From Asterias rubens (taxonomy: Eukaryota), in NCBI RefSeq assembly GCF_902459465.1, contig NC_047062.1, positions 16,058,001-16,122,000 of the forward strand: 64,000 nucleotides of DNA, given 5' to 3'. The translations under genes and the position numbers were made by a program. Of this stretch, positions 11,093-64,000 are shown in pieces (position 1 is the stretch's first letter; each line of letters opens with the position of its first letter). The notes under the pieces are model-generated. The model searched no databases and had not been told where the DNA came from. It worked only from the letters and a program-made list of their open reading frames with translations.

Positions 11093-11362
11093 CTGATTGC
11101 AGACGGCGCTGCCAAAATGGCGGCATTTGCATCCAGGCGCGGCCCGACGTCTGCCAGTGCAGAACGGGCTTCCACGGGACGTACTGCCAGTCGGCTCAGG
11201 TGAGCGCGGCTGGCGGTGGCAGGTACAGACCCCCATCGTCGTCATCATCATCATCATCAAGTGGTACGAGCGGCGGTCTTTTCTCTAATGGACGAGTCGT
11301 GACGTCATCAATGAGATCTTCATCGTCTGTTGTTAACTACAATGGTAGAACGTCATCATCTG
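11093..11362 (+). CDS. LTBP: E1: non-Ca EGF + Ser-rich linker
   Basis: tacag|CT; [32 protein letters not shown] then [25 protein letters not shown]...RTSSS; TCT G|gtaaga; 270 nt. Confidence 0.85.
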
Positions 11363-29300: not shown

Positions 29301-32300
29301 CAAAGGTTTCACACTTCAGGCTGAGAACTGTCTGGCATGTTTTGCTTACAATCTTTTATTCTTTCTTCAGATATCAATGAATGTAATGATGAAGATAGTT
29401 GTGTGAATGGCCAGTGTGTCAACCAACCAGGATCCTATCGCTGTGTATGCCCGACAGGAACACACATGTCTACAACGGAGGATAACACATGCATTGGTCA
29501 GTATTATCAGCAGGCATGATCTTCTTCCTACTATAGGCTGTTTGGGGTTTTTGCCTTTTTTTGGCCCTTGCACAAGTCACAAACATCATCATTAAAGGCA
29601 CTGAACACTATTGGTAATTACTCAAAATAATTGTTGGCTCCCTCTGAAGTAACTTCCTTTTTGAGAAATAGGTAACTTCTCACTCAAATTCAAAAAAAAG
29701 TAATGCAACAAGAGTGTTTTTTCTTTCCCTTGCAAATTCGATGACCAATTGAGCTAAACTTTTCACAGGTTTGTTATTTTATGCATAATGTTAAGATACA
29801 CCAAGTGAGAATTTACTGGTCTTTGACACTACCAAACAGTTCCAGTGTCTTTAATAAGGGTTAAAAGTCCAAAATACCTACATAATGTGCATCAGAATCT
29901 GCCAACTCTCCCCGATTCTGCGGAAAGTTCCCTGAAAATAAACCAATCCTTCCATGTTCTGATCAACAAATTTGAAAATCTTCCTGATTATGGAAACTTG
30001 TTCCCTTTATGTTGAATGTAATTCTAAATATTTTCCTGATTGCTGCACAAAATCTCCCAGAACTTGAATTTGATGCTCTTATTAACCACTCGGCCGTGAC
30101 ACCCTCTGAATCCACAGTGCAATTAAGCTTCCAATCTTTTTTCCCCGCAGATGTTGATGAATGTAGCGAGTCACCTGAAGTTTGTGGTGGAAATGGAATT
30201 ACTTGCGCCAATACCTTTGGTAGCTACACCTGTGAGTGCCCCAATGGTGCCATGTATGTTGAAGACATGCCCGGCTGCATCTACATGGACACCTTTACTG
30301 TTGGTAAATATACAAAATAACTTCTTCTACCACGCTCAGTGTTGTAGCCACAGTGGGCGGTACCAGGTTTGCGGCCTGCCTAGAACTAACAAATTTGGCA
30401 CAGCACTCGCAGCAAAATACACTGTGCGGCCCAGCACAGATTTCCCCCAGATGGTACTTCAGCAATTATGGCCCCATTTCTAAACATGAATAATTTTGTT
30501 GAACTGCTCGCCCTTGGTGGACTAGATTGGATTTAGAGCCCACCACTAAAATTGGTCTAGCTTACATTACTGTCCATGATCAATATAATTTTCAAATGTT
30601 TGCTATTTTTTTTTTTGCACTGTCAGCAGTAAAAACACATTTTAGGGAAAAATTACTGAGTTACGAATCTCTTATTGAGATTAAGCATACCAGTTGTTTC
30701 TTTGTTAATGTGAGGGATTATTTTCTCATTTTATTTGTATTGATTCATTATTATTATTCTTCAATTTTTCTTTCCAAGAAACAACGCCAGCTTCTCCCGC
30801 GACGCCCGATGAAGAAGAGCAAGGTCCAGAGAGGAAGGACTGCTACGCTTCTGTTGACGACCCCAATTTCTGCAGCAATACTTTATCCTCTAATGCTACC
30901 AGGCAGGAATGCTGCTGCAGCGTGGGTGCTGGCTGGGGAGATGACTGCCAGCTCTGGATTTGCCCGCCGGAAGACTCATGTAAGTCACTCAAAGTGAGCT
31001 AGTGCCAATAATTTCATAAAAGTTTTGATATTGATTTGATATTAGGTAGATTGATAAGCCCACTGTTTCACAATCGAATACCATATTGTACTAATAATGA
31101 TAACCGTATTAATCCTAATGACTAGTTTTTAGTTAGTGCATGAAACAATAATGTATTAGTGCACTTTACATTAGTGCCCTTGGTCATTGCCAATTGGGCA
31201 AAATATTTGACACTACAAAATGGCGACTGTGTTAGTTTACAAAGCAAAAGGAAAACCACAAACTTTGAGGCACACTTGATTGGATCATTATATTCTACTT
31301 TTACAGCATCTTTCCAGCCACATTCATTTCATAAGAAACGCTTCTTATCCAAGGCAACGAGTCCCTTTAACTAGTAGAAAACAAGTTTGGTTAAAAAGTT
31401 GAAATAAGGATATTATGTAACTAACACAATAAATGTTCCAGTAATAGTTGAACTTTGTGATTAAATCTTCGGAGTTTGTATTTTTATATGTATTCTTCAG
31501 TTGAATACAACCAGGTTTGTCCAATGGGGCGAGGGCATGCAGAGATTGAGGGCATAGAGGGATTGCATCCTGTTTTAGCAGCACAGAGAGACACAGGTGA
31601 GCAATGGACCCTTCCCATGAAATATGCTAATTACATTCACCCATGCATAAAGACCCTGTTGGTTGGCAAACTCCATAGAGTTGTGCACTAAATAGACGCG
31701 CAATCGCGTCTGCGTCACGCACCCATTACCAGTGATGTTCCCTACGTGCAATTTACATATTTCATTGGAAGGGTCTATTCTATTCAATTAAATTTATTTA
31801 TCATATTGGTGGTAAGTCATGGCCTAGCGGTTAAGAGCACCAGATTCAAGCTCTGGTGTTTGATCAGCAGAGTATGGGTTCGAGTCCCGGTCGTGACACT
31901 TGTGTCCTTAAGCAAGACACATAACCATGATTGCTTCCTAAAGTTGTGGAGGTAGTGCTTTCTGCTCTACCAGCCAGGCTTCTGATGGATGATACCCGAG
32001 CCTACATCCGTAAGGGACTGTGAAGGGGGTAACCCTGTTTCAGCCCAGGAGTACTGAGGTGGCAACGGCCCCTGAAAAAAACTTGCATATAAATCAAATC
32101 AAATCATGTGAAAACTCATTCGGGGTTTAATTTGAATGTCGTTTCTCTATCCTTGCAGGTATCAATGAGTGCAAAGTATTTCCACAGATCTGTGGTGAGT
32201 TATCCTGCTCTGATCTAAATATGATGTACACATGTGAATGTCCAGAAGGCCAACAATACAACATGGACAACAAGGAATGTGAAGGTATGTTCATTGTCTT

Positions 32301-50300: not shown

Positions 50301-53300
50301 TATTTAACCAGTGATTGAAATTATTTTTCCTGTTTTCACCAAAAACCAAAGCGGTTATCACTGAAAGAGGTGGAGTTTACTTGATTATTTAAACATTCGA
50401 TACAATAAAAACTTATTTTACTCTTAACCACTTGTGTTAGAAAGTAACATAATTTAATTATTTGAATGGCTCAAAAGAAATATTTATTTTTATTTTGTTT
50501 AAAGAGCACTGCATCCCTCCTAACTCAGAAGACTCAAATCTCAAAACAATCCCTCAAAAAGCTGCCTTGTGATAAAGCTGGTACTGGCACTAACTCATTA
50601 AAAGATTTTTACCCCACACTCGTAAGAGAAAACAGTTTGACTGTTTAACTTGATTCTCTCAAAATGTAGAGTGGCGGCACGTTACTCTGGAGGTTGTTGG
50701 TTCAAATCCCGCCCTAGTCAATTTGTCTTCGTTCAACCTCGAATCAGAACAGAACAAGATTTTGGTAACCTGAGATTTATTTTGTGAGATATCTCATACT
50801 TTAAAGTATTAAATTGTGAAGTGTTTTATTCAAGCGGGGAAAAAAAAATACATTTATTGAGAAAGTTGAAACTTTACCCCTTTACCCCACTGTTTTTTAC
50901 TGTCATTGACCAACTCTGATATTATTAGTACTCAATAACAATGTTCTGGTCGTCATCACAGACTATGACGAATGCCAGGTTGATTTCCAGACTTGCGGCA
51001 ACGGAACCTGCCAAAACTTTGATGGATTCCATCTGTGTACCTGTCCCCTTGGCTATATGTTTGATGACCTGCTCTCATTGTGCCTTGGTGGGTTGTGTTA
51101 GTAACAATCATCTCCGAGCCGTTTTCACAAAACTTTATGCAAATTTGTGAGTTCTCTTGTGCAACGTTTTCTGAATGCCCCATTCAGAATAGTCGGCATT
51201 AAAATTAATTCATTATTTCTTTTTTTTTTTCTTTCTTTTTTTTACCCACCCACCAACCCCAAATTTTTATTTTTAAATATTCAATGGCTCCATAATGTTA
51301 TTTATACACTGATGAACAAAGTAATGCCTCAAATCAACCAGATATTTTAGATGGAAGGTCTCCATGCAAGTACTTTTCAATGGATTTTCCCTGGCTTAAA
51401 AAAGCAAACAGCTTTGTAGTTTAATCTGACGACCATGGCCAGCTTGGTGTTTTTTCTTCATTTTTATTTTTTAGATTTTCAGTTATTTCTTCTGACCTAC
51501 CAACCCACAATTCCGAAGAAGAAAAACTAATCGCAATTCAACATTGACTATTTTGAATGCCCCCCCCCCCCTCCAAGTTGTGCACCACTAACAAACAAAT
51601 CTTGCGAAAGTTGACTTACACACAGTTGTGTAAAGTTTGGTGAAACCGGCTGTCATCATCAATCATTTCCATATGCATCTTCATCATCGTCATTCATCCA
51701 GACGTGACTTTCATCGCGATGCATCGGCCTAGCTTGTTCTGATCGCTTTGGTTTTTATTAATGCTTAGCAGTTGGTGGAAATCACAATGCAAGCAGGGTT
51801 GACGTACTCTGACACTATGAGACTACTCACTAGGGCAAGGGCTACTTATAATGAGTTTGTGGTGTTGTTTGGAGCTCTCTGTGGTTTTTATATTGACTGA
51901 TTGATTGATTTTTTTATTTCGGTATATAAACACAAAAAATGGTCGGTAGTACCATAAGATCATGCTAACTGATTTTCTTATCCTCCACAATACTTGTCTC
52001 CATTGATTATTCATAATTAATATTTTGATTTCAAACTAATACTATGGTATTGGCTAACATGCCTTTTTCTGTTGCATTATGTTGCACTATAATAACATGC
52101 ACTGTTTCCGTTATCCGATTGTATAAAGGTGTTAGGCAAGTGTGCTAAGCATGAAATGAAACTTGCTATTGAGCAAAACCCGGATATGTACCAAAGGGAA
52201 AAAACTCCTGCTATTTTACTTCTAAACAGACAGTGATTTGTCAAGATTCCTCCTGATTTCAGGATTTGTCTTAAACCTTCCTCGACTTTCGTGTTTTTTT
52301 CTTGAAAGGACTATGTTGGAACGGGCCCTCACAGTCTTAAGCGTCAGACACCTCAGATGAAAGAGGTCATTACATCACGTCATCAACATCATTCATGTTA
52401 TCTTAAATTACATGTATCCATTGACCATTACCCATAGTTTTATACATACATTGTTTTATTCTATAACTCTGATACCGGCTGCACAAGCCTATTAGAGATC
52501 TGTGGTCTCAGTGTCTGTGCACATGGTGAAGACAATCAGATACATTCATAGAGCTGCTTAAGCACAAAAACTAGATAAGCATGACAAAATTATGCAAACA
52601 ACAATCCAACTACCAGCCAAAATAACATGTCACATGTACAATCCATGACTGGTATCCTGCTCATTTTTGCTAAGCAGAAAATGGTTCAGCAATACTTAGT
52701 GCTTAAAAGGAAGGTACACGTTTGGTAATTACTCAAAACAAATATTAACTTAAAAACTGACTTTGTAACGAGCATTGGAGAGCTGTTGATAGTATAAAAC
52801 ATTGTGAGAAACAGCTCCCTCTGAAGTAGCATAAATTTTGAGAAAGAGGTATTTTCTCACTGAAATAATAAAAGACTTCTATCTAAAAGTCTTTTACACA
52901 AATTCACAAAAAGTACACAAATTCGTCCAACAAGGGTGTTTTTTCTCTAATCATTTTCTCACAACTTCGATGACCAATTGACTTCAAATTTTCACAGGCT
53001 TGTTATTTTATGCTTATGTTAGGATACACCAAGTGAGAATACTGGTCTTTGACAATTACCAAACGTGTACCTTCCCTTTAAGCAACTCTATACTTTATTA
53101 CCCAACAGAAGTTTTTTCATACTATTGAAATATATTAATATAATACACATAGTGAGGTGCAATGTTCTCCAATTGAAAAACACAATACTGCCGGACTTGT
53201 TTAACCATTAGTTTACTGGCCCGACACTAAAACCACTTGCCTAAAACCACTCACTAGTTAATCACTGGCCATCGACCAAGACAGTTTTTGGTTACGACTG

Positions 53301-56300: not shown

Positions 56301-59300
56301 TGTTACTTTTCAAAACAAAAATTGACTTGGTTTCAAAAAGGGCAAATGTTGTCAAGGATTGGGAGGTTGCCTTATTTTCGAAAATGGTGTTATTTCGGCA
56401 GAGGTGTAGCACAGTAAGACGAAAGAAAACTTGGGACAGAAAAAGCAAAACAAAAACTTTTCAGGATCATTTGTCAGTTTGAAGTCCTGCACCACAAGTG
56501 TATGTTTTTAAACTTACTGATGGAGTCAAGGCCGAGGTCTTAGCCCAAGACGGTTTCAAAAAGGGCCTTTACATGACACATTTTGACACTTATTGTTTTC
56601 ATGAAAGTAAAGAACTGTGTGGTTAAATTTTAACAACTTTGATATTTTTTTGTCATAAAGTCTATCACTTATTCAATCGTTTCTTCATTCACAAAACATT
56701 TCAAAGCCTGCAGTGAATTTATAAACATTAAATGATACATATTTCCTTTTCATCCTTCATTTCTGAATTTATTTCCATCTTTAAAAACTCACTGTGTTAA
56801 TTGAATATGCTAATCTGTATTGTTGATTTGGCCTGGTCTTTGGCTTGGTTCCTTCCTGTATAAAAGTTTTATCTGTTGTATATTCTGCATTTTGCTTTTA
56901 CGTCTATGTACACAAAAGAACTTTTTTTGTTTAATGACACATGTTTCCTTTTACAGGCTTCCATGTTTCTGTTGTTGTAAAATTCTGTGTTAGCTTTTGT
57001 AGTCCAGATTTTGTTAACAGAGTGCTTCTCGTTTAACGTTTTAAAGTGCTTGTTTTAGTCCTTTTTAAATTTGTTCCGTCGATCATTATTTCCTTCCTTG
57101 TTAAGTGCTTTCTGTTAAATTGTGTACCTTTCTCATATTTTTGTTCTGCTTTTGTTATTGCATTATTTTTGTAAGTTTGTATCTCTGTATTTTGGTGCTG
57201 TTGACCTGGGTTTACTAATCAGTCTTTTAGGACATCAGCACCATAGCACTTGAAAACATACTGGTAGTATTAAGCGCTGTATAAATCATAAATGTATATT
57301 GTTATTACTTTTATTATGCTTTAGATGTTATGCACAATATAAGTTCTATTTATTATTATAGTCATCTTTAAAAACTTTCTATTTTAGTTGAGTATGCTAA
57401 TCAATGCTGTTTGTTTGGCCTAGTCTTTGTCAGTATTTTGAACAAGTCTAAATTTCTCTTTTAAAAGTGGGTGGTTTTTTTCTGGGGTTTTTTGTATAAT
57501 TTGTTTGCTGCAAATGTAAATGCTAAATATGTAATTTAATGTAGGCCTACAATTTATTGGTTTTAAATTTTAAAATTTTAAACTTTATAGCAATCTATCC
57601 CCTAGGCTACAAAGGCTTTTTTTTTTTTTTTATTGAACCAGAAATAACATCAATATATTCTTCAATTTTTTATTTTGTGTCTTCTATCGGTCCTAGATAT
57701 AAATGAATGTGCATCTCAGGAAGAGGTTTGTCTGTATGGTAATTGCATTAATGAGAAGGGCTCCTTCCGTTGTGAATGCAGAGAGCCGCTGACCCTGGAT
57801 AGCACCGGCCGGAGATGTATATGTAAGTAGCAGTAGTTAATCCTTCATGGAGTTTATTTTTTAGACCTTTCTATCACAGCGTCAAAGCCCAAGTTTTTGG
57901 CCAACTGAGGTTGGAAAACTATTGGGAAGTCATAATAAAAAACAAAAACAGATGGCCACAGTTTGTAACAATGCCACACAACTATTCAAAAATATAGTGT
58001 TGAATTTGTTAGAACCAAAGCAACTAATCATGAGAGATGTTTTATTTATTTGAAAGTTTTATTCATTTGAAAGTTTGCAAAAAGTGTTGAATTTTGTCAG
58101 ACATCTGATAACACGATTTAATGTTTTGCTAACATTTGGCCGTACATACCAAACAGCTCGATTTGTTGAAATGTCTATCATGATGCCGCCATCTTGGTCA
58201 AGTTCCCTGTATCCAATAATCAGTAATGAAAGCTAATTTACATTGTACAAGGTACCAGACTACTTTTTCTTGCCTTGGTTTGATTACAATGAGTTGGATT
58301 AAAATAAAATCAAGATGGCAATATCATGGATGAGGTTCAAAGAACTGCTAAATTGGTCTCATAACTCAAAAAGCTGACTTTAAAAGAAATTTAAATAAGC
58401 ACTTTCATACAGTGGTAAATATAAAAACTATATAAAAACTAGTTGTTTTTATTATTTTGTATAAATAAACAACTTCTAAATCGATCTTGTATGTTTAATT
58501 TCCCCCAGCTGTTATCGGTGTGGTCGGTACAGAAAGAGACAATAGAAAGAGTCTTTGCTGGCACAAAACAGATAATCCCGGGTACGAGTCAGTGTGTGGA
58601 ATGATCGTTAATACAGCTCTGACTTACAAGGAATGTTGCTGCTCTGAAGGAGTGGGTTGGGGAACAAGTTGCGACCCTTGCCCTCCCAACGGTGGATGTG
58701 AGTCAATCTTAAACATTTCACTTCACATACTTTGTCTTTTGCACAAACGATAGTGATAAAACTGAAACTTGTAAATTTCTCACCAAATATAAAGAAATCC
58801 TGCTCTCTGCTTTGCTTCTCATGTGCATCGATTTTAAATTGCTACTTTTTGTGTAATTTAATATTTATTTTTAAAACTTTTTTTAATGATGTAAAAATCA
58901 AACTCAATTCAGCCTCCTGAAGGCTGTGAAACTTATTTCTGAAATTAACCAATCAATAATCAATAATAAATATTTATATGAATGTATTCCAAATGAAGAT
59001 GAACAAGGAGTTCTCTGTGAGACTGGTCAGGATCCATCGGGTCAAACTGGCTCAGGACCGGCCGCTGTCCGTGAGTACCCAGACGGCTTCTATCATCCAA
59101 CTGGTGAGGATGGAATATACGCACACGGTTCTGAAGGGACGACCAGCGTAGTGGAGGTGTAAGTTAGCATTCAGTGTTTTTTTCTTGGTTTTGTTGTTGT
59201 TTTGTTGTTGTTTTTTAGGGCATGTCTTGTTTGAGCAGTCTACTGATGGCTGAATGATGTGTGTGGGTGCAATTCCCAGTCATGATAATTGTGTCCTTGA

Positions 59301-60589
59301 AATAGTTCTGAAAAATAGAGTTTCAAAGGATCAAATGCAGATCAACAAGAAACAATGTGATTATTTAAAACGAAAGCTAGCTAGAAGTTATATCTTCCGT
59401 TTTACAAATGTTCTTAATAATGATAACAAACCTCTTTTTTTTCAGGTTTAATCCAAATGTTGGTCCAGACCAAGGTGGTCCTCGTCCATTTAGAGAACCG
59501 TATCCGACTGGTCAGTCCACTGGAGGTTCTCCACCCTACACTGGTAGGCAACCTCCCTACACAGGCGGGCAACAACCGAACCCTGCTGGTCAGCCACCGT
59601 ACTATGGTGGTCAGTCACCAAACCCTGCCGGTCAACCTCCCTACTACGGTGGTCAGTCACCAAACCCCGGTGGCCAACGACCCTACTATGGGGGACAGAC
59701 ACAGAATGCTGGCGGTCAACCTCTTAACACTGGCGGTCAACAACCTTATTATGGTGGCCAGTCACCAAATCCTGTCCGTCCAAATCCCTACTACGGTGGG
59801 CAGACGCCAAACCCTGGCGGTCAACCCCCGTACACTGGCAGACAACCTCCCTACACAGGTGGTCAGTCACAAACTCCAAGCGGGCAGCCTCCGTACTACG
59901 GAGGGCAGCAGCAACCATACCCTAGTGGTGGGCAGAACTACCAAGGAGGAGGGCAGCAACCAACATACCCTGGCCGACAACAGCCCAACTATAACCCCAA
60001 CCCTAACACCAGGCCACAAGGTGTTAATCCTAGACCTCAAACTGGAGGTGGAGGACAGCCAAGCAGGGGCACATCTGGGCAAGGTAAGAACAATTGGAAA
60101 ACAAAATTGGGTGGCTATTAAATCGTCCTTACTCCCAACTGAGAAGCTGAATAATGCACGACACATCCACGTGTTTGAGCTGCAGCCAGTCACACTGACC
60201 CATATGACCCCTGAGCACAGCCAGATTATAAGCTGAAATCGATTCTCAAGGAAGCCATTTGAAAATCTGAAACTCTTTGTTAAACTTAGTTTATGTTTCC
60301 ATGTTATTGGATTGATAAACTGTGGGCTCATAAAAGTAACTTAACAAAAAAAACAGAAAAAAAACGAATGATAATAATTCACACAAAAATATCTTGATTT
60401 TTAATAAATACTCCTTTGTTTTCTCAACAAACTTCAGGCGCAGGTGCCTGTGATAGTTTACCACAAAACATCTGCGGTCAAGGGAAGTGCCTCAATGTGG
60501 AGGGGACCTACACATGCCAGTGCTACGCTGGCTTCTCATTTGATAACGACCAAAAACGCTGCGTACGAGCAAGATACAACAGAGGCTGA
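11093..60589 (+). CDS. LTBP: LTBP-like gene (latent TGF-beta binding protein), 41 coding exons in window, 5'-incomplete; EGF-hybrid-cbEGF-TB1-5xEGF-TB2-24xEGF-TB3-GQPY repeat-EGF
   Basis: Manual splice model: every exon is flanked by AG/GT and the reading frame is continuous. 38 exons are phase 1-1; E39/E40 join in phase 2. Total 6047 nt ending in TGA at 60587. The hybrid + three TB (8-Cys, CCC) domains + 32 EGF modules match the LTBP layout, not fibrillin. Confidence 0.9.
13954..14030 (+). repeat. 17-bp CpG-rich tandem repeat (~4.5 copies)
   Basis: gacaactcgacggttcg units at 13954, 13971, 13988, 14005. Confidence 0.85.
15704..15886 (+). CDS. LTBP: E2: hybrid domain, 5' part
   Basis: tacag|GT; ...[46 protein letters not shown]; G|gtgagt; 183 nt. 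Confidence 0.92.
16186..16335 (-). mobile_element. SINE fragment with V-domain-like block
   Basis: Reverse complement: gcctttcacctc...ccccggttcgaatc...gggttttcagtcccc...tgcgtgggttttccccc...ggttttcctc; related head at 45991-46090 (+). Confidence 0.65.
17504..17564 (+). pseudogene. Donor-less duplicate of hybrid-domain exon E3
   Basis: ttttcag|[22 protein letters not shown], part of a ~135-bp tandem duplication (17429-17564 / 17565-17699); no GT at the equivalent donor position. Confidence 0.75.
17637..17699 (+). CDS. LTBP: E3: hybrid domain, 3' part
   Basis: tttacag|GA; [21 protein letters not shown]; G|gtaagt; 63 nt. Confidence 0.9.
18156..18281 (+). CDS. LTBP: E4: cbEGF
   Basis: tccag|AT; [42 protein letters not shown]; A|gtaagt. 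Confidence 0.95.
18686..19027. mobile_element. Kolobok-like MITE family 1 copy (opposite orientation)
   Basis: TTAA|agcactggacacg...gtccagtgcct|TTAA. Confidence 0.85.
19119..19274 (+). CDS. LTBP: E5: TB1 (8-Cys) domain
   Basis: [51 protein letters not shown]; G|gtaaga. Confidence 0.93.
20604..20675 (+). CDS. LTBP: E6: end of TB1 and short linker
   Basis: ctgcag|CT; [24 protein letters not shown]; 3' end uncertain (in-phase donors at 20631, 20670 and 20676). Confidence 0.8.
22569..22941. mobile_element. Kolobok-like MITE family 1 copy
   Basis: TTAA|agacacaggacactattggtaatt...aattaccaatagtgtccactgcct|TTAA. Confidence 0.9.
22967..23347. mobile_element. Fully palindromic TTAA-flanked MITE family 3
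   Basis: TIR AGGAACACGTTGC; whole element folds back around gggagtcaaa|tttgactccc (23156/7). Confidence 0.88.
26399..26530 (+). CDS. LTBP: E7: EGF
   Basis: [44 protein letters not shown]; G|gtaggg. Confidence 0.93.
26674..27053. mobile_element. Kolobok-like MITE family 1 copy
   Basis: TTAA|agacactgaacactattggtaatt...gtgtccactgcct|TTAA. Confidence 0.9.
27814..27939 (+). CDS. LTBP: E8: cbEGF
   Basis: [42 protein letters not shown]; G|gtgaag. Confidence 0.93.
28804..28932 (+). CDS. LTBP: E9: cbEGF
   Basis: [43 protein letters not shown]; G|gtaatt. Confidence 0.93.
29042..29300 (+). mobile_element. Degraded SINE of the 61631 family
   Basis: gtgggttcaagtc...gtgacacttgtgcccttaagcaagacactt, then body similar to 61760-61900. 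Confidence 0.7.
29371..29496 (+). CDS. LTBP: E10: cbEGF
   Basis: [42 protein letters not shown]; G|gtcagt. Confidence 0.93.
29596..29850. mobile_element. Kolobok-like MITE family 1 copy, internally deleted
   Basis: TTAA|aggcactgaacactattggtaatt...ttccagtgtct|TTAA. Confidence 0.85.
30151..30303 (+). CDS. LTBP: E11: cbEGF + linker
   Basis: [51 protein letters not shown]; G|gtaaat. Confidence 0.92.
30779..30979 (+). CDS. LTBP: E12: TB2, TGF-beta-binding type 8-Cys domain (C-x4-C)
   Basis: [67 protein letters not shown]; T|gtaagt. Confidence 0.93.
31501..31596 (+). CDS. LTBP: E13: end of TB2 + linker
   Basis: ttcttcag|TT; [32 protein letters not shown]; G|gtgagc. Confidence 0.92.
31811..32074 (+). 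mobile_element. tRNA-derived SINE, same head as 61631 but different body
   Basis: tggcctagcgg...ggttcgagtcc...gtgtccttaagcaagacac; body matches 36579-36685. Confidence 0.8.
32159..32284 (+). CDS. LTBP: E14: EGF (GINEC type)
   Basis: [42 protein letters not shown]; G|gtatgt. Confidence 0.93.
32414..32816. mobile_element. Non-autonomous DNA transposon with CATAGAG termini and 8-bp TSD (P-element-like)
   Basis: 33-bp TIR CATAGAGCTATATATAT(C/T)GACTAGAGC(A/G)CTAAC; GGTTGAAC duplicated at 32406-13 and 32817-24. Confidence 0.85.
32925..33163. mobile_element. CCWGG-flank MITE
   Basis: CCAGG|gcctaagttcatagagctgcttaa...ttaagcagctctaataaattgggc|TCAGG. Confidence 0.7.
33231..33356 (+). CDS. LTBP: E15: EGF (GINEC type)
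   Basis: [42 protein letters not shown]; G|gtgtgt. Confidence 0.92.
33389..33619. mobile_element. Foldback element with tRNA-like arms, copy 1
   Basis: gttgaacaaagacaa / ttgtctttgttcaac perfect 15-bp ends; minus-strand A-box (TAGCTCAGTAGG) and B-box (GGTTCAAATC). Confidence 0.7.
33778..33903 (+). CDS. LTBP: E16: EGF (GINEC type)
   Basis: [42 protein letters not shown]; G|gtaagt. Confidence 0.93.
34261..34386 (+). CDS. LTBP: E17: EGF (GINEC type)
   Basis: [42 protein letters not shown]; G|gtaaac. Confidence 0.93.
34604..34732 (+). CDS. LTBP: E18: EGF (paralog of E25)
   Basis: [43 protein letters not shown]; G|gtaatg. Confidence 0.92.
35063..35180. mobile_element. Kolobok-like MITE family 1 fragment
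   Basis: One end only (ttaaaggcactattggcaattac...ctccctctgaagta); stops ~30 nt before the E19 acceptor. Confidence 0.75.
35213..35332 (+). CDS. LTBP: E19: EGF (paralog of E26)
   Basis: [40 protein letters not shown]; G|gttagt. Confidence 0.92.
35617..35742 (+). CDS. LTBP: E20: EGF
   Basis: [42 protein letters not shown]; G|gtaaat. Confidence 0.92.
   Translation, partial: LLTSVEDIQIFAAMGPAWPEIAPTDVSVRKDMNSRISTVLA
36290..36505. mobile_element. Foldback element with a perfect 79-bp inverted repeat and CCGAGGCGAAGCC centre
   Basis: 36290-36368 is the exact reverse complement of 36427-36505. Confidence 0.8.
36816..37002 (+). repeat. 93-bp tandem duplication x2
   Basis: catgaaacagatttgtcc...gtttctttttg at 36816 and 36909, identical as read. 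Confidence 0.9.
37217..37342 (+). CDS. LTBP: E21: EGF
   Basis: [42 protein letters not shown]; T|gtaagt. Confidence 0.92.
37422..37935. mobile_element. Foldback-headed element (perfect 34-bp IR 37444-77 / 37499-532) with ctcgaccaat motifs
   Basis: Inverted repeat seen directly; right boundary approximate. Confidence 0.6.
38198..38310. repeat. ~110-bp palindromic element with CTCF-like ends, second copy
   Basis: ctctaggcggcagcagac...accaggta / tacctggtagtctgccgcc. Confidence 0.65.
38594..38961. mobile_element. Fully palindromic TTAA-flanked MITE family 3, second copy
   Basis: TTAA|aggaacacgttgccttggatc...gatccaaggcaacgtgttcct|TTAA; a right-half fragment also at ~31205-31366. Confidence 0.9.
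39083..39211 (+). CDS. LTBP: E22: EGF
   Basis: [43 protein letters not shown]; A|gtaaat. Confidence 0.9.
39664..40003. mobile_element. Foldback element with AGGCGAAGCCGAGG centre
   Basis: acaattgttgcacgctgtgac (39664) / gtcacagcgtgcaacaattgt (39823); tail with ctcgaccaatcaaa ends ~20 nt before the E23 acceptor. Confidence 0.65.
40026..40151 (+). CDS. LTBP: E23: EGF
   Basis: [42 protein letters not shown]; G|gtagga. Confidence 0.9.
40370..40560. mobile_element. Foldback element with tRNA-like arms, copy 2
   Basis: Two ~62-bp tRNA-like segments back to back (40381-40444 minus, 40461-40522 plus). Confidence 0.72.
40662..41107. mobile_element. Foldback element with CTCGGCCTTCGGCCTCGG centre
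   Basis: Imperfect ~85-bp arms spanning 40912-41098; ttctgattggct motif at 5' side. Confidence 0.65.
41241..41366 (+). CDS. LTBP: E24: EGF
   Basis: [42 protein letters not shown]; G|gtaagt. Confidence 0.9.
41447..41641. mobile_element. MITE, PIF/Harbinger-like
   Basis: 32-bp TIR AGCCCGGTTCATACTTCC(A/T)GCGAATGCGAATG; left flank TAA, right flank TTC; superfamily assignment tentative. Confidence 0.75.
41937..42065 (+). CDS. LTBP: E25: EGF (paralog of E18)
   Basis: [43 protein letters not shown]; G|gtaaac. Confidence 0.92.
42386..43276 (+). repeat. 137-bp tandem repeat x6, each containing 23-bp subrepeats
   Basis: Unit starts at 42386, 42523, 42660, 42797, 42934, 43071; last unit is 206 bp (three extra ttgatattgtgtatggaaaagcc). 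Confidence 0.95.
43337..43891 (+). repeat. 37-bp minisatellite x15
   Basis: ATA(A/T)ATAGGTACCTG(C/T)(A/T)AGGGTAGAGGTTGATAGTGT, head to tail. Confidence 0.95.
44164..44283 (+). CDS. LTBP: E26: EGF (paralog of E19)
   Basis: [40 protein letters not shown]; G|gtgagt. Confidence 0.9.
44311..44770. mobile_element. Foldback element with tRNA-like arms, copy 3, right arm split by a MITE (44550-44709)
   Basis: Left arm reverse complement: gatagctcagttgatagagcgccagcacgttaatccagaggtcccaggttcaagtccc; right arm the same but interrupted. Confidence 0.72.
44862..44987 (+). CDS. LTBP: E27: cbEGF
   Basis: [42 protein letters not shown]; G|gtaggt. Confidence 0.93.
45417..45536 (+). CDS. LTBP: E28: cbEGF
   Basis: [40 protein letters not shown]; G|gtgagc. 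Confidence 0.94.
45592..45923. mobile_element. Kolobok-like MITE family 1 copy
   Basis: TTAA|agacactggacactatt...aattaccaatagtttgaagtgcc. Confidence 0.8.
45991..46090 (+). mobile_element. tRNA-Gly-like SINE head
   Basis: ggttggtgtagtgg...gccttccacc...ccccggttcaaatccc, then gggttttcagtccct; no proper cloverleaf. Confidence 0.6.
46197..46316 (+). CDS. LTBP: E29: cbEGF
   Basis: [40 protein letters not shown]; G|gtaaga. Confidence 0.94.
46862..46987 (+). CDS. LTBP: E30: cbEGF
   Basis: [42 protein letters not shown]; G|gtgagt. Confidence 0.93.
47303..47680. mobile_element. Kolobok-like MITE family 1, best-preserved copy
   Basis: Perfect 24-bp TIR AGGCAGTGGACACTATTGGTAATT and TTAA on both sides; no ORF; TTAA TSD with RR termini is the Kolobok signature. 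Confidence 0.92.
48513..48699. mobile_element. CCWGG-family MITE
   Basis: ggccaaatttcatagagctgctt...aagcagctctattgaatgtggcc. Confidence 0.65.
49295..49663. mobile_element. Kolobok-like MITE family 2
   Basis: TTAA|agccattggacccttttggta...taccgaaagggtccaatggct|TTAA, 21-bp TIR with 1 mismatch. Confidence 0.88.
49698..49817 (+). CDS. LTBP: E31: EGF
   Basis: [40 protein letters not shown]; G|gtaagt. Confidence 0.92.
50962..51087 (+). CDS. LTBP: E32: EGF
   Basis: [42 protein letters not shown]; G|gtgggt. Confidence 0.92.
52468..52543 (+). pseudogene. Degenerate EGF pseudo-exon fragment resembling E33
   Basis: Reads [22 protein letters not shown], against E33 [20 protein letters not shown]; no acceptor AG; cut off by a MITE. 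Confidence 0.5.
52707..53077. mobile_element. Kolobok-like MITE (variant TIR), nested in a CCWGG-family MITE
   Basis: TIR A(A/G)GGAAGGTACACGTTTGGTAATT, TTAA TSD; host MITE 52540-52702 resumes as gcaactctat at 53082. Confidence 0.88.
53416..53547 (+). CDS. LTBP: E33: non-Ca EGF
   Basis: [44 protein letters not shown]; G|gtaaaa. Confidence 0.9.
53884..54063. mobile_element. CCWGG-flank MITE
   Basis: CCTGG|gcccaatttcatagc...agctcggtgaaattggcc|CCTGG: exact 5-bp duplication. Confidence 0.75.
54594..54719 (+). CDS. LTBP: E34: cbEGF
   Basis: [42 protein letters not shown]; G|gttagt. Confidence 0.93.
54895..55106. mobile_element. Kolobok-like MITE family 1 half copy
   Basis: Right half ending aattaccaatagtgtccagtgtct; left start approximate. 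Confidence 0.78.
55241..55372 (+). CDS. LTBP: E35: cbEGF
   Basis: [44 protein letters not shown]; G|gtagaa. Confidence 0.93.
55395..55765 (+). mobile_element. Two tandem copies of another tRNA-derived SINE family
   Basis: tgcaaaggtc...ggttcgaatccc...cgagt...gcctgtggattt repeated; relatives at 34915-35030 (-) and 45205-45335 (+). Confidence 0.7.
56105..56290 (+). CDS. LTBP: E36: linker + EGF
   Basis: [62 protein letters not shown]; G|gtgagt. Confidence 0.92.
57697..57822 (+). CDS. LTBP: E37: cbEGF
   Basis: [42 protein letters not shown]; T|gtaagt. Confidence 0.94.
58509..58697 (+). CDS. LTBP: E38: TB3 (8-Cys) domain
   Basis: [63 protein letters not shown]; T|gtgagt. Confidence 0.93.
58999..59158 (+). 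CDS. LTBP: E39: end of TB3 + linker (phase 1 in, phase 2 out)
   Basis: [53 protein letters not shown]; GT|gtaagt. The acceptor (tgaag) has a weak pyrimidine tract but is the only in-phase, stop-free choice I found. Confidence 0.8.
59446..60083 (+). CDS. LTBP: E40: 212-aa Gly/Gln/Pro/Tyr-rich repeat exon
   Basis: tttttcag|G (phase 2, matches E39); [11 protein letters not shown]...([14 protein letters not shown]-like)n...RGTSGQ; G|gtaaga; 638 nt; lies inside ORF 59408..60121. Confidence 0.88.
60438..60589 (+). CDS. LTBP: E41: terminal EGF and stop
   Basis: cttcag|GC; [50 protein letters not shown]; an alternative in-frame acceptor lies 6 nt downstream (60444). Confidence 0.88.
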
Positions 60590-61122
60590 TCAGCAACTCT
60601 TTCTTAAAATCTTAATATCTTTTTCTGTGTATGTTTTGATGTGGTTTTTATCGGTTGTGCCTTCCATTGTACAAAATCCATTTTCAAGAAGCAGCTTATG
60701 CACATTGGAAGGGTTGGGGCGTGGTTATCACCCCCCCCCCCCCCCCCCTCCCCAAAGCTGCATGGTGAGCCAATGTACCCAGACTACGAACTAACATGCT
60801 GCATTTTAAGCTATGGAGCATTGGAAACATCTTCATTCATTTCTGTAATGGGAATTGTTGATTATTGGTGGGGTCTTTGTTTTGTTTATTTGGTCAGTTT
60901 AAAAATGTCTATATTTTGAGGTTTACAAGCAATCATTTGGCCTACTTGACTGTATTTGTGTGTTTCGTAGAAACTCAAGCAGTCACATGAAGTCACATGA
61001 ACTTGTCTCTCCATGCTTACTTGAGATCCCCATAAACAAATACTGGATTTAGTTTGAGGTGAGTATAATAATTCAGCTCAAGCTCAATCGACTTTTAAAC
61101 TTGCAACAGCTTAAAAATTCCA

Positions 61123-61128
61123 AATAAA
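61123..61128 (+). terminator. Candidate polyadenylation signal (AATAAA) of the LTBP gene
   Basis: First AATAAA I found downstream of the stop; others at 62473 and 62584; no transcript evidence. Confidence 0.3.
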
Positions 61129-61630
61129 TATCAACAAAATGAATATATTTTAATCTGTTGTATAATCTTTTAAACATCTAGAAGTTTAACCTTGAAAATT
61201 GTATATTATTATTACATGACACATCTGCTTTTGTTTGATTTGCCGTTTGTGCAAAAATGTTGAAGCCAATGTTCCTCTTAAAGGTTCGGTCTTAGATTGG
61301 TTTTTGTCAATGAAATGCTGATTTATAGACAAAATTATCAAGAAACATGAAGTAAAAGTCAGTCACCTGTGAAAGTTTCAGCTGAAAACAGTGTTTGTAC
61401 AGCAAACAAAACATGGTATTTTCATGAAGAACGTTGAATCCATCCACGTTTAGTGAGGGGGTGGTGATTACCAACAACATCTCTGGGCGCAGCATTCACA
61501 AACGGACACCAAGGAAATTAGACTTCTCAGTCGACCCTCAGAAATCTGAGAACCGATTCATGCATGAATCGTTTCTCAGACTGAAATGTTTTTGGATCAA
61601 AAGTTATCCAAACCATATTACTATGAAAGT

Positions 61631-62032
61631 GGAAGTGTCGTGGCCGAGTGGTTAAGAGCACCGAATTCAAACTCGGGCGTTTCTGATCAGCAGAGTGTGG
61701 GTTCGAATCCCCAGCCGTGACACTTGTGTCCTTAAGCAAGACACTTAACCATTGCTTCGTATGGGATGTAAAGCCGTAGGTCCCATGTGTTGTGTAGCGC
61801 ATGTAAATGAACCCAGTGCACTTATCGAAAAAAAAGGGGTTCGCCCTGTTTTTTTTTGCTGTGGCTGCTGTATGCGTCGAAGCACATTGTAAACCCTTAA
61901 AGTGTGCTAAATAATTGGGTCTCAGAATTCATCACTGCAATAACCTACATCTCTCTGAAAGTTTGTATATACTCAGCGCCTTGAGTACCTTGTTATATAA
62001 GACTTTGATATTATTATTATTATTATTATTAT
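61631..62032 (+). mobile_element. Near full-length tRNA-derived SINE with CORE-like block and (TAT)n tail
   Basis: A-box tggccgagtgg, B-box ggttcgaatccc, gtgacacttgtgtccttaagcaagacacttaacc, tail tattattat... Confidence 0.85.
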
Positions 62033-63784
62033 GAAGGGAATCCTTTCCCAAAAATTGTCATGCTACCAACAGCTGCTGAGTGCTTCTTACCAAGCAAGTT
62101 TCATGCCCATTCATTTTGAGAGTACATTATCTATGCCCGAACCTTTAGAGGTATCATAAAGGATTGGTAAGGATGAAAAAACACCATTGTCGAATTTTAG
62201 TCTGAAACCTCGGAGATTATAAAGCTCAAGGATCACTTTTTTTCTGTGAAATATTTCCCTCTGAAATTAAAGTCACCATGTTCAAGAAAACTGTATCTGA
62301 AAACCTTAACAAAAATGCAACAAGATTTCAGTTTGTTACAACAAAAATTAAGGACACGGTTACATGGTGGAAAATGTGCAAGGTTTTTAACTATTTGGGG
62401 ACATTATCTTCTCCCTGCCCAGATTTTCATAAGTTTGGTATTTCATGTAAAATTTGCAGTATATGCTGCCCAAATAAATTCAACAGAGACTGATCACAAT
62501 TATTGGCATTCTAGCTCAAATTTACTGACGTCTTCAAGGAAATTGAGTCTGCATCCAACTTCTCTTGCATTTCATTTGACATTAATAAAAGCATACATTA
62601 AATTAGTAAACAGTATAAGAACAAATTAGCACCTATTCCAAAGAAATATATATATAGTTTTTTTAAGACATTATTTGTTTATTTACTAGATAGCATGTAC
62701 TCCCCCCAAAAAAGGTTTCCTTTTTTTATTTATTCATCATTTTAGGGAAGTAAATTGGTATATTATGTTTCCAAAAACTTTGAAATACCCAAATTTTACA
62801 TAAAATTATCAACAGCCAAAAAATCTTACACATTTTGTTTTTATTCATCCAAAAAATGTTTCCCGTTGTAGCCATACTTTGTGTTTGGCTTTGTTTCTCG
62901 AGTCACACTCCTTGTATTTACTCAAAACCAATATTTTAATTTATTATATACCCAATTGTTAGCATTGCCAATTTGGCTTCAATATTTGTAGCAGTGTATA
63001 TAAAAAACAATGTCTGCTTAAAATAGTTGGTATCAATTAACATATAATGTACATCGTCTTCCAATGCAGTCGTAAATCTAAATGCATGTTTGGAAAAGGA
63101 AGTTATATTTTAGTTAATGAAGTATAGCACTGTTCTTTGTCTATAACTATCATTTGCATTCTTTTAATGATAAATTTTATCTGATAAATTTTATGTATTT
63201 ACCATATTAATTATCCTATAAATTTCATTAAAAACAAACTGCAGGTACCGAATGCAAAGGCTCAAACCAATAAGCCATTTGCGAGTTGAAATTGTTTCTG
63301 AATTAACTTATTAGTGTCACAAAATGTTAGTTATAATAATGAAAACGTTTGCCTAAAAAGACAATCAGGGTGGTTTAAAATGCTGAAACCAAACACAATT
63401 ACAACAAATTACAAGCAATATACAGATAAGTAGTAACCAAGCAAATTAAAATAACGCACATTTTAGGCAGATCTATTGGAGACAGTTTAAATAGTTCAGG
63501 GCAAGCTTGTGTGTAGCAACCTCCAAATCAATGAGCAAACCCTAGTACCATTGTGACATAGACATTCATTTAAAATTGTCAAGAGTGTTTGCCCTTTCTA
63601 CATGTATGTTATCACACAAAAGCTAATCAAGAATCAGGGAACATAGCAACTGTTTCTGAAGTCTTGAGGAAGTCAAATTTAAGCGGTAAATTGTGACTCA
63701 GCAAGTCACTTTATTACCAGACATAATTTCAAACTTGCAAATGGCTTATTCAAACCATGGAGGAAGGAATAGGAGACTTTCCAA

Positions 63785-63896
63785 CGCTAGGTGGCAGCAG
63801 ACATACCGGGTAAATTTCCATTGTTTACGTAGTTCTGAACATGCGCATAATTCTGAGAACAATGGATTTACCCGGTAAGTCTGCTGCCCTCTATCG
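63785..63896. repeat. ~110-bp palindromic element with CTCF-like ends
   Basis: cgctaggtggcagcagac...accgggtaaat / atttacccggtaagtctgctgccctctatcg; relatives at 38198-38310 and 17395-17445. Confidence 0.7.
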
Positions 63897-64000
63897 TCCC
63901 AGAAAGTCTCCCATTGTTCAAACAGTCCAAAGGTGTGGTAGTTAACCTTACACCATCAGATGTTAGAATTTCAGGCCTGAAATTATGGCGTCTTTGCCCC

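What the first reader, a model, noticed from the sequence alone, without database searches (positions are those of the whole stretch)
59446..60083. Prion-like Gly/Gln/Pro/Tyr repeat domain inserted in the C-terminal matrix-anchoring end
Seen: one 638-nt exon encodes 212 cysteine-free residues built from ~14-aa (42-bp) units: [56 protein letters not shown], plus 7-aa GRQPPYT half-units. It is almost uncharged, with regularly spaced Tyr/Tyr-Tyr. It is the only exon entered in phase 2, suggesting a separate origin from the phase-1 modules. Established: Tyr-spaced G/Q/P/S tracts drive coacervation (FUS-type domains); Gln is a transglutaminase substrate; Tyr-Tyr motifs are substrates for dityrosine/DOPA cross-linking in marine structural proteins. 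Vertebrate LTBPs have no such tract here. Inference: an LTBP with a built-in self-assembly or cross-linking module coupling TGF-beta storage to a condensate or elastic network. This could be relevant to echinoderm mutable connective tissue if the host is an echinoderm.
Basis: partly seen in the sequence, partly recalled or inferred. Interest (0 to 1): 0.8.

Follow-up and report, generated by a model that had tools for sequence, protein, structure and literature searches.

The report
Repeat-rich flexible linker in sea-star LTBP
A sea-star gene for a matrix protein that stores the growth factor TGF-beta has a normally short flexible linker near its end, grown into a 212-residue glycine/proline/glutamine/tyrosine repeat that is expressed and conserved; it is an interesting variant of a known feature, not a new kind of thing.

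Summary
Window 59446-60083 (+) is one 638-nt exon with AG/GT borders. It encodes 212 Cys-free, Lys-free residues (G 23%, P 22%, Q 17%, Y 10%) in 7/14-residue units.

Transcript contigs from four RNA runs of two sea-star species splice it exactly as predicted. Ten of 11 listed between-species changes are synonymous. Against a more distant sea-star cDNA (P0001/L001) the tract has omega of about 0.2, unit-by-unit orthology and one clean 14-residue unit difference.

The host gene is LTBP-like:
- It has four TB-type domains.
- One TB domain carries the LTBP-only two-residue insertion and aligns without gaps to the human LTBP1 TGF-beta-binding TB domain.
- Its end reads cbEGF-TB-linker-EGF, and the best solved match is LTBP1.

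The tract sits where every LTBP has a flexible, poorly conserved TB3-EGF3 linker, which is long and Pro/aromatic-rich in LTBP2/4 (PMC3906135). It is therefore an in-place expansion (263 residues between the flanking cysteines), not a foreign insert.

With 22% proline, "prion-like" fits poorly; the composition looks elastomer-like. Cross-linking and condensation remain untested.

No relative beyond sea stars was found, and the scan had not noted this before on other DNA. Moderate interest.

The parts
57697..57822 (+). Exon for the calcium-binding EGF domain that precedes the last TB domain (the counterpart of LTBP1 cbEGF14).
   Evidence: Pfam EGF_CA, E 6.8e-8. Present in transcript contigs and joined to 58509 by a GT..AG intron. 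Omega 0.015 against L001.
58509..58697 (+). Exon for most of the last TB (8-Cys) domain, Cys1-Cys7 (the counterpart of LTBP1 TB3). Cys6 and Cys7 are spaced normally (CDPCP), with no insertion.
   Evidence: Pfam TB, E 7.5e-9. Aligns with cbEGF14-TB3 of LTBP1 chain 9r3s_C. Joints confirmed in four runs. Omega 0.03.
58999..59158 (+). Exon with the eighth TB cysteine and the first, non-repetitive, acidic P/G/Y-containing part of the linker. Phase 1 on entry, phase 2 on exit.
   Evidence: Joints 58697|58999 and 59158|59446 in the transcript contigs. Translation. Omega 0.22.
59446..60083 (+). The finding: a 638-nt exon of 212 codons (59447-60082) encoding the G/Q/P/Y tandem repeat. About 20 heptads are arranged as roughly 14-residue units of the type [14 protein letters not shown].
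   Evidence: exact splice borders, RNA support in two species, synonymous-biased divergence, omega 0.20, and orthologous units in L001.
59575..59877 (+). Core of the array, with the best-preserved 42-nt units. Five of the six PYYGG units lie here (codons 47, 61, 75, 96 and 110 of the exon); the sixth, at codon 145, starts at about 59879, just past this range.
   Evidence: TRF period 42 (81% matches) and period 105 (score 244). Unit identity matrix.
60438..60589 (+). Last coding exon: a non-calcium-binding EGF domain (the counterpart of LTBP1 EGF3), an 8-residue basic tail and the TGA stop at 60587-60589. No terminal cbEGF follows.
   Evidence: Pfam EGF/EGF_CA/cEGF. Aligns to EGF3 of 9r3s_C. 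Transcript contigs run on unspliced past the stop. The L001 cDNA has the same stop.
60590..64000 (+). Long 3' UTR that runs to the end of the window or beyond, interrupted by an interspersed repeat at 61621-61960.
   Evidence: The L001 cDNA aligns from 60436 onward in blocks up to 63968 at 74-82% identity. RNA contigs cover 60734-61660 and 62041-63300.
30841..30966 (+). Context: the TGF-beta-propeptide-binding type of TB domain in the same gene, with the two-residue insertion between Cys6 and Cys7. This is what makes the gene an LTBP rather than a fibrillin.
   Evidence: Aligns without gaps to human LTBP1 1ksq_A, E 3.2e-16, with CQLWICP opposite CEIFPCP. The criterion comes from PMC3306419.

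Best explanation
The exon encodes a sea-star-lineage expansion of the naturally flexible linker that every LTBP carries between its last TB domain and its C-terminal EGF domain.

A short P-Y/G-Q motif was multiplied in place into about 20 heptads. The linker is now 263 residues between the flanking cysteines, against a stated minimum of 34 residues ('34 or many more') across LTBPs (PMC3906135).

The product is most likely an intrinsically disordered, proline/glycine-stiffened, water-loving chain. It would act as a long extensible tether, or entropic spring, between the TB domain (the fibrillin-docking region in LTBP1) and the terminal EGF. It would have roughly 95 nm of contour length and evenly spaced Tyr (and some Arg) side chains able to make weak, multivalent contacts with neighbouring matrix molecules.

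Shown: the exon is real, constitutively spliced, translated in this frame, conserved in sequence pattern and nearly in length among sea stars, and located at the homologous linker position of an LTBP-type gene.

Inferred: disorder, the tether or spring role, and Tyr/Arg-mediated association.
For: - Anatomy and expression: exact GT..AG joints in transcript contigs of four runs from two species, with no contig skipping the exon.
- Coding constraint: 10 of 11 listed organism-B differences are synonymous third-position changes (p = 1.3e-4). Against the L001 cDNA, dS is 0.35 and omega 0.20, compared with 0.015-0.10 for the flanking domains.
- Age: units match their orthologues best (90-95% identity). 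Paralogous units share only 36-57% of third positions while keeping the amino-acid motif. The array therefore predates the species split and the motif is selected.
- Length is nearly kept: one 14-residue unit and a few 1-4-residue indels differ.
- Position: the collinear match cbEGF-TB ... EGF to LTBP1 9r3s_C (E 1.1e-20), and the LTBP-specific TB insertion in the same gene.
- Known behaviour of this linker: NMR shows the LTBP1 TB3-EGF3 linker is highly flexible, poorly conserved, and longer and Pro/aromatic-rich in LTBP2/4 (PMC3906135).
- Disorder: GRAVY is -1.62 with low net charge, which places the tract on the natively unfolded side of the Uversky charge-hydropathy boundary (my calculation: normalised hydropathy 0.32 against a boundary of 0.43). 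There is no Pfam domain. AF2 gives no secondary structure in the tract (weak evidence).
- P+G of 45% matches the elastomeric class (PMC5424786).
Against: - No experiment or disorder predictor was available. The single-sequence AF2 model was poor everywhere, including the TB domain, so it cannot discriminate.
- Omega of 0.2 shows constraint but not which property is constrained.
- A pure spacer would not obviously need strictly periodic Tyr-Tyr pairs, which hints at something more specific (binding or cross-linking).
- Only sea-star sequences could be compared, so the timing and generality of the expansion are unknown.
- Similarity of the tract to a mammalian LTBP2 linker is marginal (E 0.035, compositional). 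Homology of the linker rests on position, not on sequence.
Confidence: 0.55

Rival explanations
1. One reading: a covalent cross-linking or self-assembly module. The periodic Tyr-Tyr pairs would be oxidised to dityrosine or DOPA, or the 35 Gln would serve as transglutaminase acceptor sites. This would turn the LTBP into a resilin-like elastic or condensate-forming network node that couples TGF-beta storage to tissue mechanics.
For: - The roughly 14-residue G/P-rich units with conserved Tyr resemble the resilin 15-residue repeat, which is cross-linked through dityrosine and coacervates (PMC7794388).
- Tyr periodicity is far beyond chance, and Tyr positions are conserved in the orthologue.
- Transglutaminase does cross-link the C-terminal region of LTBP1/3 to fibrillin in vertebrates (PMC8932414).
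- Tyr plus Arg 'stickers' separated by G/Q/S/P spacers match the grammar of phase-separating domains (established knowledge).
Against: - There is no direct evidence of any modification.
- The tract has no Lys, so it cannot form transglutaminase links with itself.
- In vertebrates the proposed LTBP1-fibrillin cross-link uses a Lys of LTBP1 cbEGF13, not the linker. LTBP2/4, the paralogues with long linkers, were not cross-linked.
- There is no sequence homology to resilin or any other known cross-linked protein.
Confidence: 0.25
2. A tolerated low-complexity expansion. Replication slippage inflated a weakly constrained linker, and the tract has no function beyond not disturbing the flanking domains.
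For: - LTBP linkers are poorly conserved and vary widely in length among paralogues (PMC3906135).
- Omega in the tract (0.20) is 2-13 times higher than in the flanking domains, and indels occur, including a whole-unit difference.
- Two adjacent units are 86% identical at the DNA level, which suggests ongoing duplication or loss.
Against: - Omega of 0.2 at dS of 0.35 is clear purifying selection.
- Paralogous units have diverged at synonymous sites yet keep the amino-acid motif.
- Length changed by only about 10% at a divergence where synonymous sites are a third to two-thirds saturated.
Confidence: 0.15
3. A mineral- or surface-binding region, for instance ossicle matrix or adhesive, analogous to the P/G/Q/N-rich repeats of sea-urchin spicule-matrix proteins.
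For: Repetitive, rapidly evolving low-complexity domains are typical of skeletal matrix proteins, and echinoderms mineralise within connective tissue (PMC5460417).
Against: - The sea-star skeletal proteome paper does not mention fibrillin or LTBP and found no urchin-like repeat proteins.
- A sea-star adhesive footprint catalogue has no mention of LTBP or fibrillin.
- The tract is basic, not acidic, and there is no C-type lectin domain.
Confidence: 0.04
4. Not a real coding exon: a wrong frame, a retained intronic microsatellite or an assembly artefact.
For: A second frame is also open across the repeat (ORF 59457-60236), as is common for repeats.
Against: - Four RNA assemblies from two species splice it precisely.
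- Only the reported frame links the TB and EGF exons.
- Substitutions fall on third positions of that frame.
- An independent cDNA-like contig carries the orthologous tract in frame.
Confidence: 0.01

Closest known systems
TB3-EGF3 interdomain linker of vertebrate LTBPs, especially the long Pro/aromatic-rich linkers of LTBP2 and LTBP4
   Same: - Same position, between the last TB domain and the non-calcium-binding EGF, in a protein with the same C-terminal domain order.
- Cys-free, without a recognised domain, poorly conserved and rich in Pro and aromatic residues.
- Shown by NMR to be a flexible 'rope' in LTBP1 (PMC3906135; an example linker is in P0072).
   Different: - The sea-star linker is 263 residues, against a stated minimum of 34 residues ('34 or many more') across LTBPs and roughly 115 in the hedgehog LTBP2-like protein.
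- It is a regular 7/14-residue tandem repeat, basic rather than acidic, and very rich in Gly and Gln.
- Sequence similarity is only marginal (E 0.035).
- The sea-star protein also lacks the final cbEGF.
The 'unique region' of vertebrate fibrillins (Pro-rich in fibrillin-1, Gly-rich in fibrillin-2, Pro/Gly-rich in fibrillin-3)
   Same: A lineage-specific, Cys-free, low-complexity G/P-rich segment set among EGF/TB modules of the same superfamily. It is thought to act as a hinge and to take part in matrix interactions (PMC3306419).
   Different: - It lies after TB1 near the N-terminus rather than near the C-terminus.
- It is not described there as a tandem repeat.
- It has no periodic Tyr or Gln.
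- It belongs to a different subfamily (fibrillin, not LTBP).
Resilin exon-1 repeats (GGRPSDSYGAPGGGN) and related G/P/Q/Y elastomeric repeats (spider MaSp2, wheat HMW glutenin)
   Same: - Units of about 14-15 residues.
- High Gly+Pro content with one conserved Tyr position per unit.
- Hydrophilic and predicted disordered.
- Composition in the elastomeric rather than the amyloid class (PMC7794388; PMC5424786).
   Different: - No detectable homology.
- Here the repeat is a linker inside a multidomain EGF/TB protein, not the bulk of a structural protein.
- Tyr comes in pairs.
- Dityrosine cross-linking is not shown.
FUS-type low-complexity ('prion-like') domains
   Same: Near absence of charge apart from Arg, regularly spaced Tyr, and G/Q/S-rich spacers.
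   Different: - Proline is 22%, against a low level in FUS-type domains (from memory).
- The protein is extracellular.
- No homology.
- No predictor or assay was run.

Membership tests
LTBP (latent TGF-beta-binding protein) family | Four 8-Cys modules (one hybrid plus three TB) interspersed with EGF/cbEGF arrays | tested here: met
   Pfam TB hits on exons at 15.7, 19.1, 30.8 and 58.5 kb. About 31 EGF-type exons lie between them. Hybrid and TB types were not told apart.
LTBP (latent TGF-beta-binding protein) family | Two-residue insertion between Cys6 and Cys7 of the propeptide-binding TB domain, found only in LTBPs (PMC3306419) | tested here: met
   Window 30841-30966 aligns without gaps to human LTBP1 1ksq_A (E 3.2e-16), with CQLWICP opposite CEIFPCP. 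The other TB exons have CxxCP.
LTBP (latent TGF-beta-binding protein) family | C-terminal order cbEGF - TB - long Cys-free linker - non-calcium-binding EGF (PMC3906135) | tested here: met
   Spliced translation. Collinear match to LTBP1 9r3s_C, E 1.1e-20. Best database relatives of the C-terminal piece are LTBP2-like and LTBP1-like proteins.
LTBP (latent TGF-beta-binding protein) family | A final calcium-binding EGF after EGF3, reported as conserved in all complete LTBP-like sequences down to the acorn worm (PMC3906135) | tested here: not met
   The stop codon comes 8 residues after the EGF at 60587-60589. Transcripts run on unspliced, and the L001 cDNA ends the same way. In addition, about 24 EGF modules separate the propeptide-type TB from the last TB, against one in LTBP1. 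The gene is therefore a divergent LTBP-like member.
LTBP (latent TGF-beta-binding protein) family | Covalent binding of the TGF-beta propeptide and docking on fibrillin microfibrils | not testable with these tools
   Requires biochemistry.
Prion-like / FUS-type low-complexity domain | Q/N- or S/Y/G/Q-rich composition with few Pro and few charges, scoring as prion-like with PLAAC or PAPA | tested here: inconclusive
   Q+N is 24%, Y 10%, G 23% and charges are few, but Pro is 22%. No predictor was available. High P+G argues against amyloid-type behaviour.
Prion-like / FUS-type low-complexity domain | Regularly spaced aromatic 'stickers' | tested here: met
   21 Tyr with spacings dominated by 7, 13 and 14 residues. 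Lag-7/14 pairs number 14, against 3.7 +/- 1.7 in shuffles.
Prion-like / FUS-type low-complexity domain | Phase separation or fibril formation of the isolated domain | not testable with these tools
   Needs recombinant protein.
Resilin-type cross-linked elastomer | Short G/P-rich tandem units with a conserved Tyr; disordered; high P+G | tested here: met
   compared with PMC7794388 and PMC5424786. This is a 'works like' resemblance only.
Resilin-type cross-linked elastomer | Homology to resilin (repeat consensus, chitin-binding R&R domain) | tested here: not met
   No Pfam hit in the tract. The search of 1.84 billion representatives gave only one true relative, a sea-star LTBP fragment.
Resilin-type cross-linked elastomer | Di- or trityrosine cross-links in the mature material | not testable with these tools
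   Needs mass spectrometry or fluorescence on native tissue.
Sea-urchin spicule-matrix repeat proteins | C-type lectin domain joined to P/G/Q/N-rich repeats; presence in the skeletal proteome | tested here: not met
   There is no lectin domain in the C-terminal part. The sea-star skeletal proteome paper reports no such repeat proteins and does not mention LTBP or fibrillin.

The most novel reading that the evidence does not exclude
Sea stars have turned the passive C-terminal linker of an LTBP into a resilin-like, Tyr- or Gln-cross-linkable elastic segment. The latent TGF-beta store would then be wired mechanically into the connective-tissue network, and stretching or enzymatic cross-linking of the tract would tune growth-factor release. 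That would be a molecular link between matrix mechanics, regeneration and echinoderm connective-tissue behaviour.
Probability: 0.12. Interest if true: 0.7.

Novelty: new variant of a known kind. Interest (0 to 1): 0.38.

Why it matters
LTBPs position latent TGF-beta on fibrillin microfibrils. The flexibility of their C-terminal 'knotted rope' is thought to matter for docking and activation.

Here the rope is about five times longer than in LTBP1, built of regular Tyr-bearing units and held under selection. That offers a natural experiment on what linker length and chemistry do for matrix tethering.

If the Tyr pairs or Gln residues turn out to be cross-linked, it would be the first elastomer-type segment built into an LTBP. 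It would also give a concrete candidate for study in sea-star connective tissue and regeneration.

If not, it is a neat documented case of repeat expansion inside a known variable linker.

Tried and rejected
- **HMMER search of 1.84 billion cluster representatives with the 212-residue tract.** It gave 71 hits. Only P0001 is a true relative. The rest are unrelated 7-residue-period repeats from assorted proteins, so they were rejected as periodicity and composition matches.
- **Word-indexed homologue searches.** P0001 residues 215-606 gave only LTBP2-like, LTBP1-like and fibrillin fragments. P0001:300-606 gave nothing. The tool's length window kept full-length echinoderm LTBPs out of reach, so other echinoderm classes could not be examined.
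- **Sea-urchin LTBP1-like model P0073.** It stops just after TB3 and its genomic locus is not on record.
- **Metagenome scan.** It returned only the same contig as L001.
- **ESM Atlas look-alikes.** Best score 0.66, meaningless.
- **AF2 on the C-terminal 399 residues, single sequence.** Mean pLDDT was 41 and even the TB domain was unmodelled. This is uninformative about disorder.
- **BLASTP of the sea-star linker against the hedgehog LTBP2 linker.** E 0.035, compositional only. The idea of an ancestral QPPY motif is left as a lead.
- **Literature searches.** Searches for the motif strings, for the assembly accession and for LTBP or fibrillin in sea-star skeletal and adhesive proteome papers found nothing.
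- **Earlier scan notes.** Searches by words and by sequence were blank.
- **Exon shuffling from elsewhere in the window.** No other copy of the exon DNA exists in the 64 kb.

Full report
**1. The observation**

The stretch 59446-60083 on the + strand is bounded by a polypyrimidine tract plus AG on the left and by GTAAGA on the right. Frame 59447-60082 gives 212 codons without a stop.

Composition:
- G 48, P 47, Q 35, Y 21, N 16, T 14, R 10, S 10.
- No Cys, no Lys, one Asp, one Glu.
- pI 9.7 and GRAVY -1.62.

Cutting the sequence before each G-Q gives about 20 heptads.

Tandem Repeats Finder reports periods of 21, 42, 84 and 105 nt, with scores of 165-244. Tyr spacing at lags 7 and 14 gives 14 pairs, against 3.7 +/- 1.7 in 5000 shuffles, none of which reached 14. 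The repeat is real and far beyond chance.

**2. It is an expressed, translated exon**

Assembled transcript contigs from four RNA runs were laid on 57400-63300. Two of the runs carry one species label and two carry another. The contigs join:
- 57696-57822 | 58509-58697 | 58999-159158 should read 58999-59158 | 59446-60083 | 60438 onward.
- Every intron is GT..AG, and no contig skips the repeat exon.

The spliced translation reads cbEGF, TB domain, linker, repeat, EGF, an eight-residue tail and a stop at 60587-60589. The repeat exon is entered in phase 2 and left in phase 1. Its length is 3x212+2, so skipping it would break the frame.

The second species has the exon at the same length. Of its 11 listed differences, 10 are synonymous third-position changes (binomial p = 1.3e-4).

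**3. Conservation in a more distant sea star**

The only true relative found among 1.84 billion cluster representatives is P0001. It is a 606-residue C-terminal fragment, 89% identical over the tract. It is encoded without introns on a 6.4-kb cDNA-like contig, L001. That contig aligns exon by exon to the window at 80-90% identity and continues through about 3.4 kb of 3' UTR.

| Exon | Omega (codon-wise comparison) |
|---|---|
| cbEGF | 0.015 |
| TB | 0.03 |
| First linker exon | 0.22 |
| Repeat exon | 0.20 (dS 0.35) |
| Last EGF | 0.10 |

The two tracts differ by one exact 14-residue unit and a few 1-4-residue indels.

At the DNA level, units match their positional orthologues best: 90%, 95%, 88% and 83%. 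Paralogous units within a species are 52-86% identical and share only 36-57% of third positions.

So the array is older than the split between these species. It is not being homogenised, and its amino-acid motif is held by selection. One unit has been gained or lost recently.

**4. What the gene is**

- The + strand carries one large gene from about 9.7 kb to 60.6 kb.
- At the 5' end there is a 4-Cys motif plus an EGF.
- There are four TB-type exons, at 15.7, 19.1, 30.8 and 58.5 kb.
- There are about 31 EGF-type exons, each with phase-1 splice sites on both sides.
- The TB at 30841-30966 aligns without gaps to the propeptide-binding TB of human LTBP1 (1ksq_A, E 3.2e-16). The alignment includes the two extra residues between Cys6 and Cys7. 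PMC3306419 describes these as essential for binding and as confined to LTBPs.
- The C-terminal piece has LTBP1 (9r3s_C, E 1.1e-20) as its best solved relative, and the match cbEGF14-TB3 ... EGF3 is collinear.
- Its best database relatives are LTBP2-like and LTBP1-like proteins.

The gene is therefore LTBP-like, but divergent in two ways. About 24 EGF modules separate the propeptide-type TB from the last TB. The terminal cbEGF, reported as conserved in all complete LTBP-like sequences found down to the acorn worm (PMC3906135), is absent in both sea-star sequences.

**5. Where the tract sits**

[quoted passage not shown] According to that paper:
- The linker has no domain homology and is poorly conserved.
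- NMR shows it is highly flexible in LTBP1 (the 'knotted rope' picture).
[quoted passage not shown] In the sea star, the distance from the last TB cysteine to the first EGF cysteine is 263 residues. The first 47 are non-repetitive and acidic, with P/G/Y. They are encoded together with the last TB cysteine by exon 58999-59158.

The phase-2 intron therefore lies inside the linker. The two linker exons together (160 + 638 nt) make a normal phase 1-1 unit. No other copy of the exon DNA exists in the window.

The simplest history is in-place expansion of a short P-Y/G-Q motif, not insertion of a foreign module. Direct sequence similarity to the mammalian linker is only marginal (E 0.035), so homology rests on position.

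**6. How it most likely works**

Shown: the tract is hydrophilic, almost free of acidic residues, weakly basic, 45% Gly+Pro, and has evenly spaced Tyr.

Inferred:
- It is disordered. Normalised hydropathy is 0.32, below the Uversky boundary of 0.43 for its net charge. This is my calculation.
- It behaves as an extensible tether of roughly 95 nm contour length between the fibrillin-docking TB region and the terminal EGF.

Elastomeric proteins are set apart from amyloid formers by just such a high P+G content (PMC5424786). 'Prion-like' is therefore a poor label.

The unit resembles the resilin 15-residue repeat in length, G/P richness and a conserved Tyr (PMC7794388). Tyr and Arg could give weak multivalent contacts.

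Covalent cross-linking is possible but unsupported:
- The tract has no Lys.
- In vertebrates the transglutaminase link between the LTBP1 C-terminal region and fibrillin was assigned to a Lys in cbEGF13.
- That link was not seen for LTBP2/4, the long-linker paralogues (PMC8932414).

I put about 0.55 on the tether reading, 0.25 on a specific cross-linking or self-assembly role, 0.15 on a merely tolerated expansion, and the rest on minor options.

**7. Limits**

- Only sea-star sequences could be compared.
- The length window of the word-indexed protein search, and the single representative search, kept other echinoderm classes out of reach.
- Single-sequence AF2 was uninformative, and so was the Atlas search.
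- No paper in the searchable library mentions the motif.
- The scan's own notes had no earlier record of it.
- Tissue of expression is unknown, because the runs are coded.

**8. Verdict**

It overstates novelty of position and origin, and it mislabels the chemistry. What is there is a new variant of a known feature: a lineage-specific, selected, repeat-built version of the LTBP TB3-EGF3 linker. Interest is moderate.

Noticed in passing
window 30841-30966 (+): This TB domain carries the LTBP-only two-residue insertion between Cys6 and Cys7. It aligns without gaps to the propeptide-binding TB of human LTBP1 (E 3.2e-16). The scan noted it separately as s1-180036.
   Followed up: partly
window 60438-60589 (+): The protein ends right after the non-calcium-binding EGF (tail RARYNRG, then stop). 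The terminal cbEGF, reported as conserved in all complete LTBP-like sequences found (PMC3906135), is missing both here and in the related sea-star cDNA.
   Followed up: partly
window 34588-34736 vs 41920-42069, and 35223-35338 vs 44174-44289: Two EGF exons occur twice at 85-88% DNA identity, in the same order. This indicates a segmental duplication inside the long array of non-calcium-binding EGF exons (32-44 kb).
   Followed up: partly
window 50962-51086 (+): A well-formed cbEGF exon with good splice sites is absent from the related species' cDNA (L001 goes straight from the 49.7-kb exon to the 53.4-kb exon). It may be a cassette exon or a lineage difference.
   Followed up: no
window 61621-61960: An interspersed repeat inside the 3' UTR has very high RNA word depth (tens of thousands). 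Partial copies lie in introns at 31816-31940 and 29075-29215. ARAGORN calls no tRNA there.
   Followed up: partly
window 42188-43321: An intronic tandem array with a period of about 137 bp shares a 45-bp core with the interspersed repeat at 61621-61960.
   Followed up: no
window 60590-64000 and L001 2349-5563: The 3' UTR is unusually long (at least 3.4 kb) and alignable between the two sea stars at 74-82% identity. A poly-C run at 60731-60753 breaks the RNA assemblies.
   Followed up: no
P0001 residue about 582 (L001): The related species' sequence has Arg where the window has the fourth cysteine of the last EGF (TYTRQC against TYTCQC). This is either a sequencing error in that contig or a broken disulphide.
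   Followed up: no
window 11190-11400 (+): A Ser-rich low-complexity stretch, including a run of nine Ser, follows the first EGF-like exon in the same open frame. It is possibly part of the N-terminal hinge. Exon borders were not determined.
   Followed up: no
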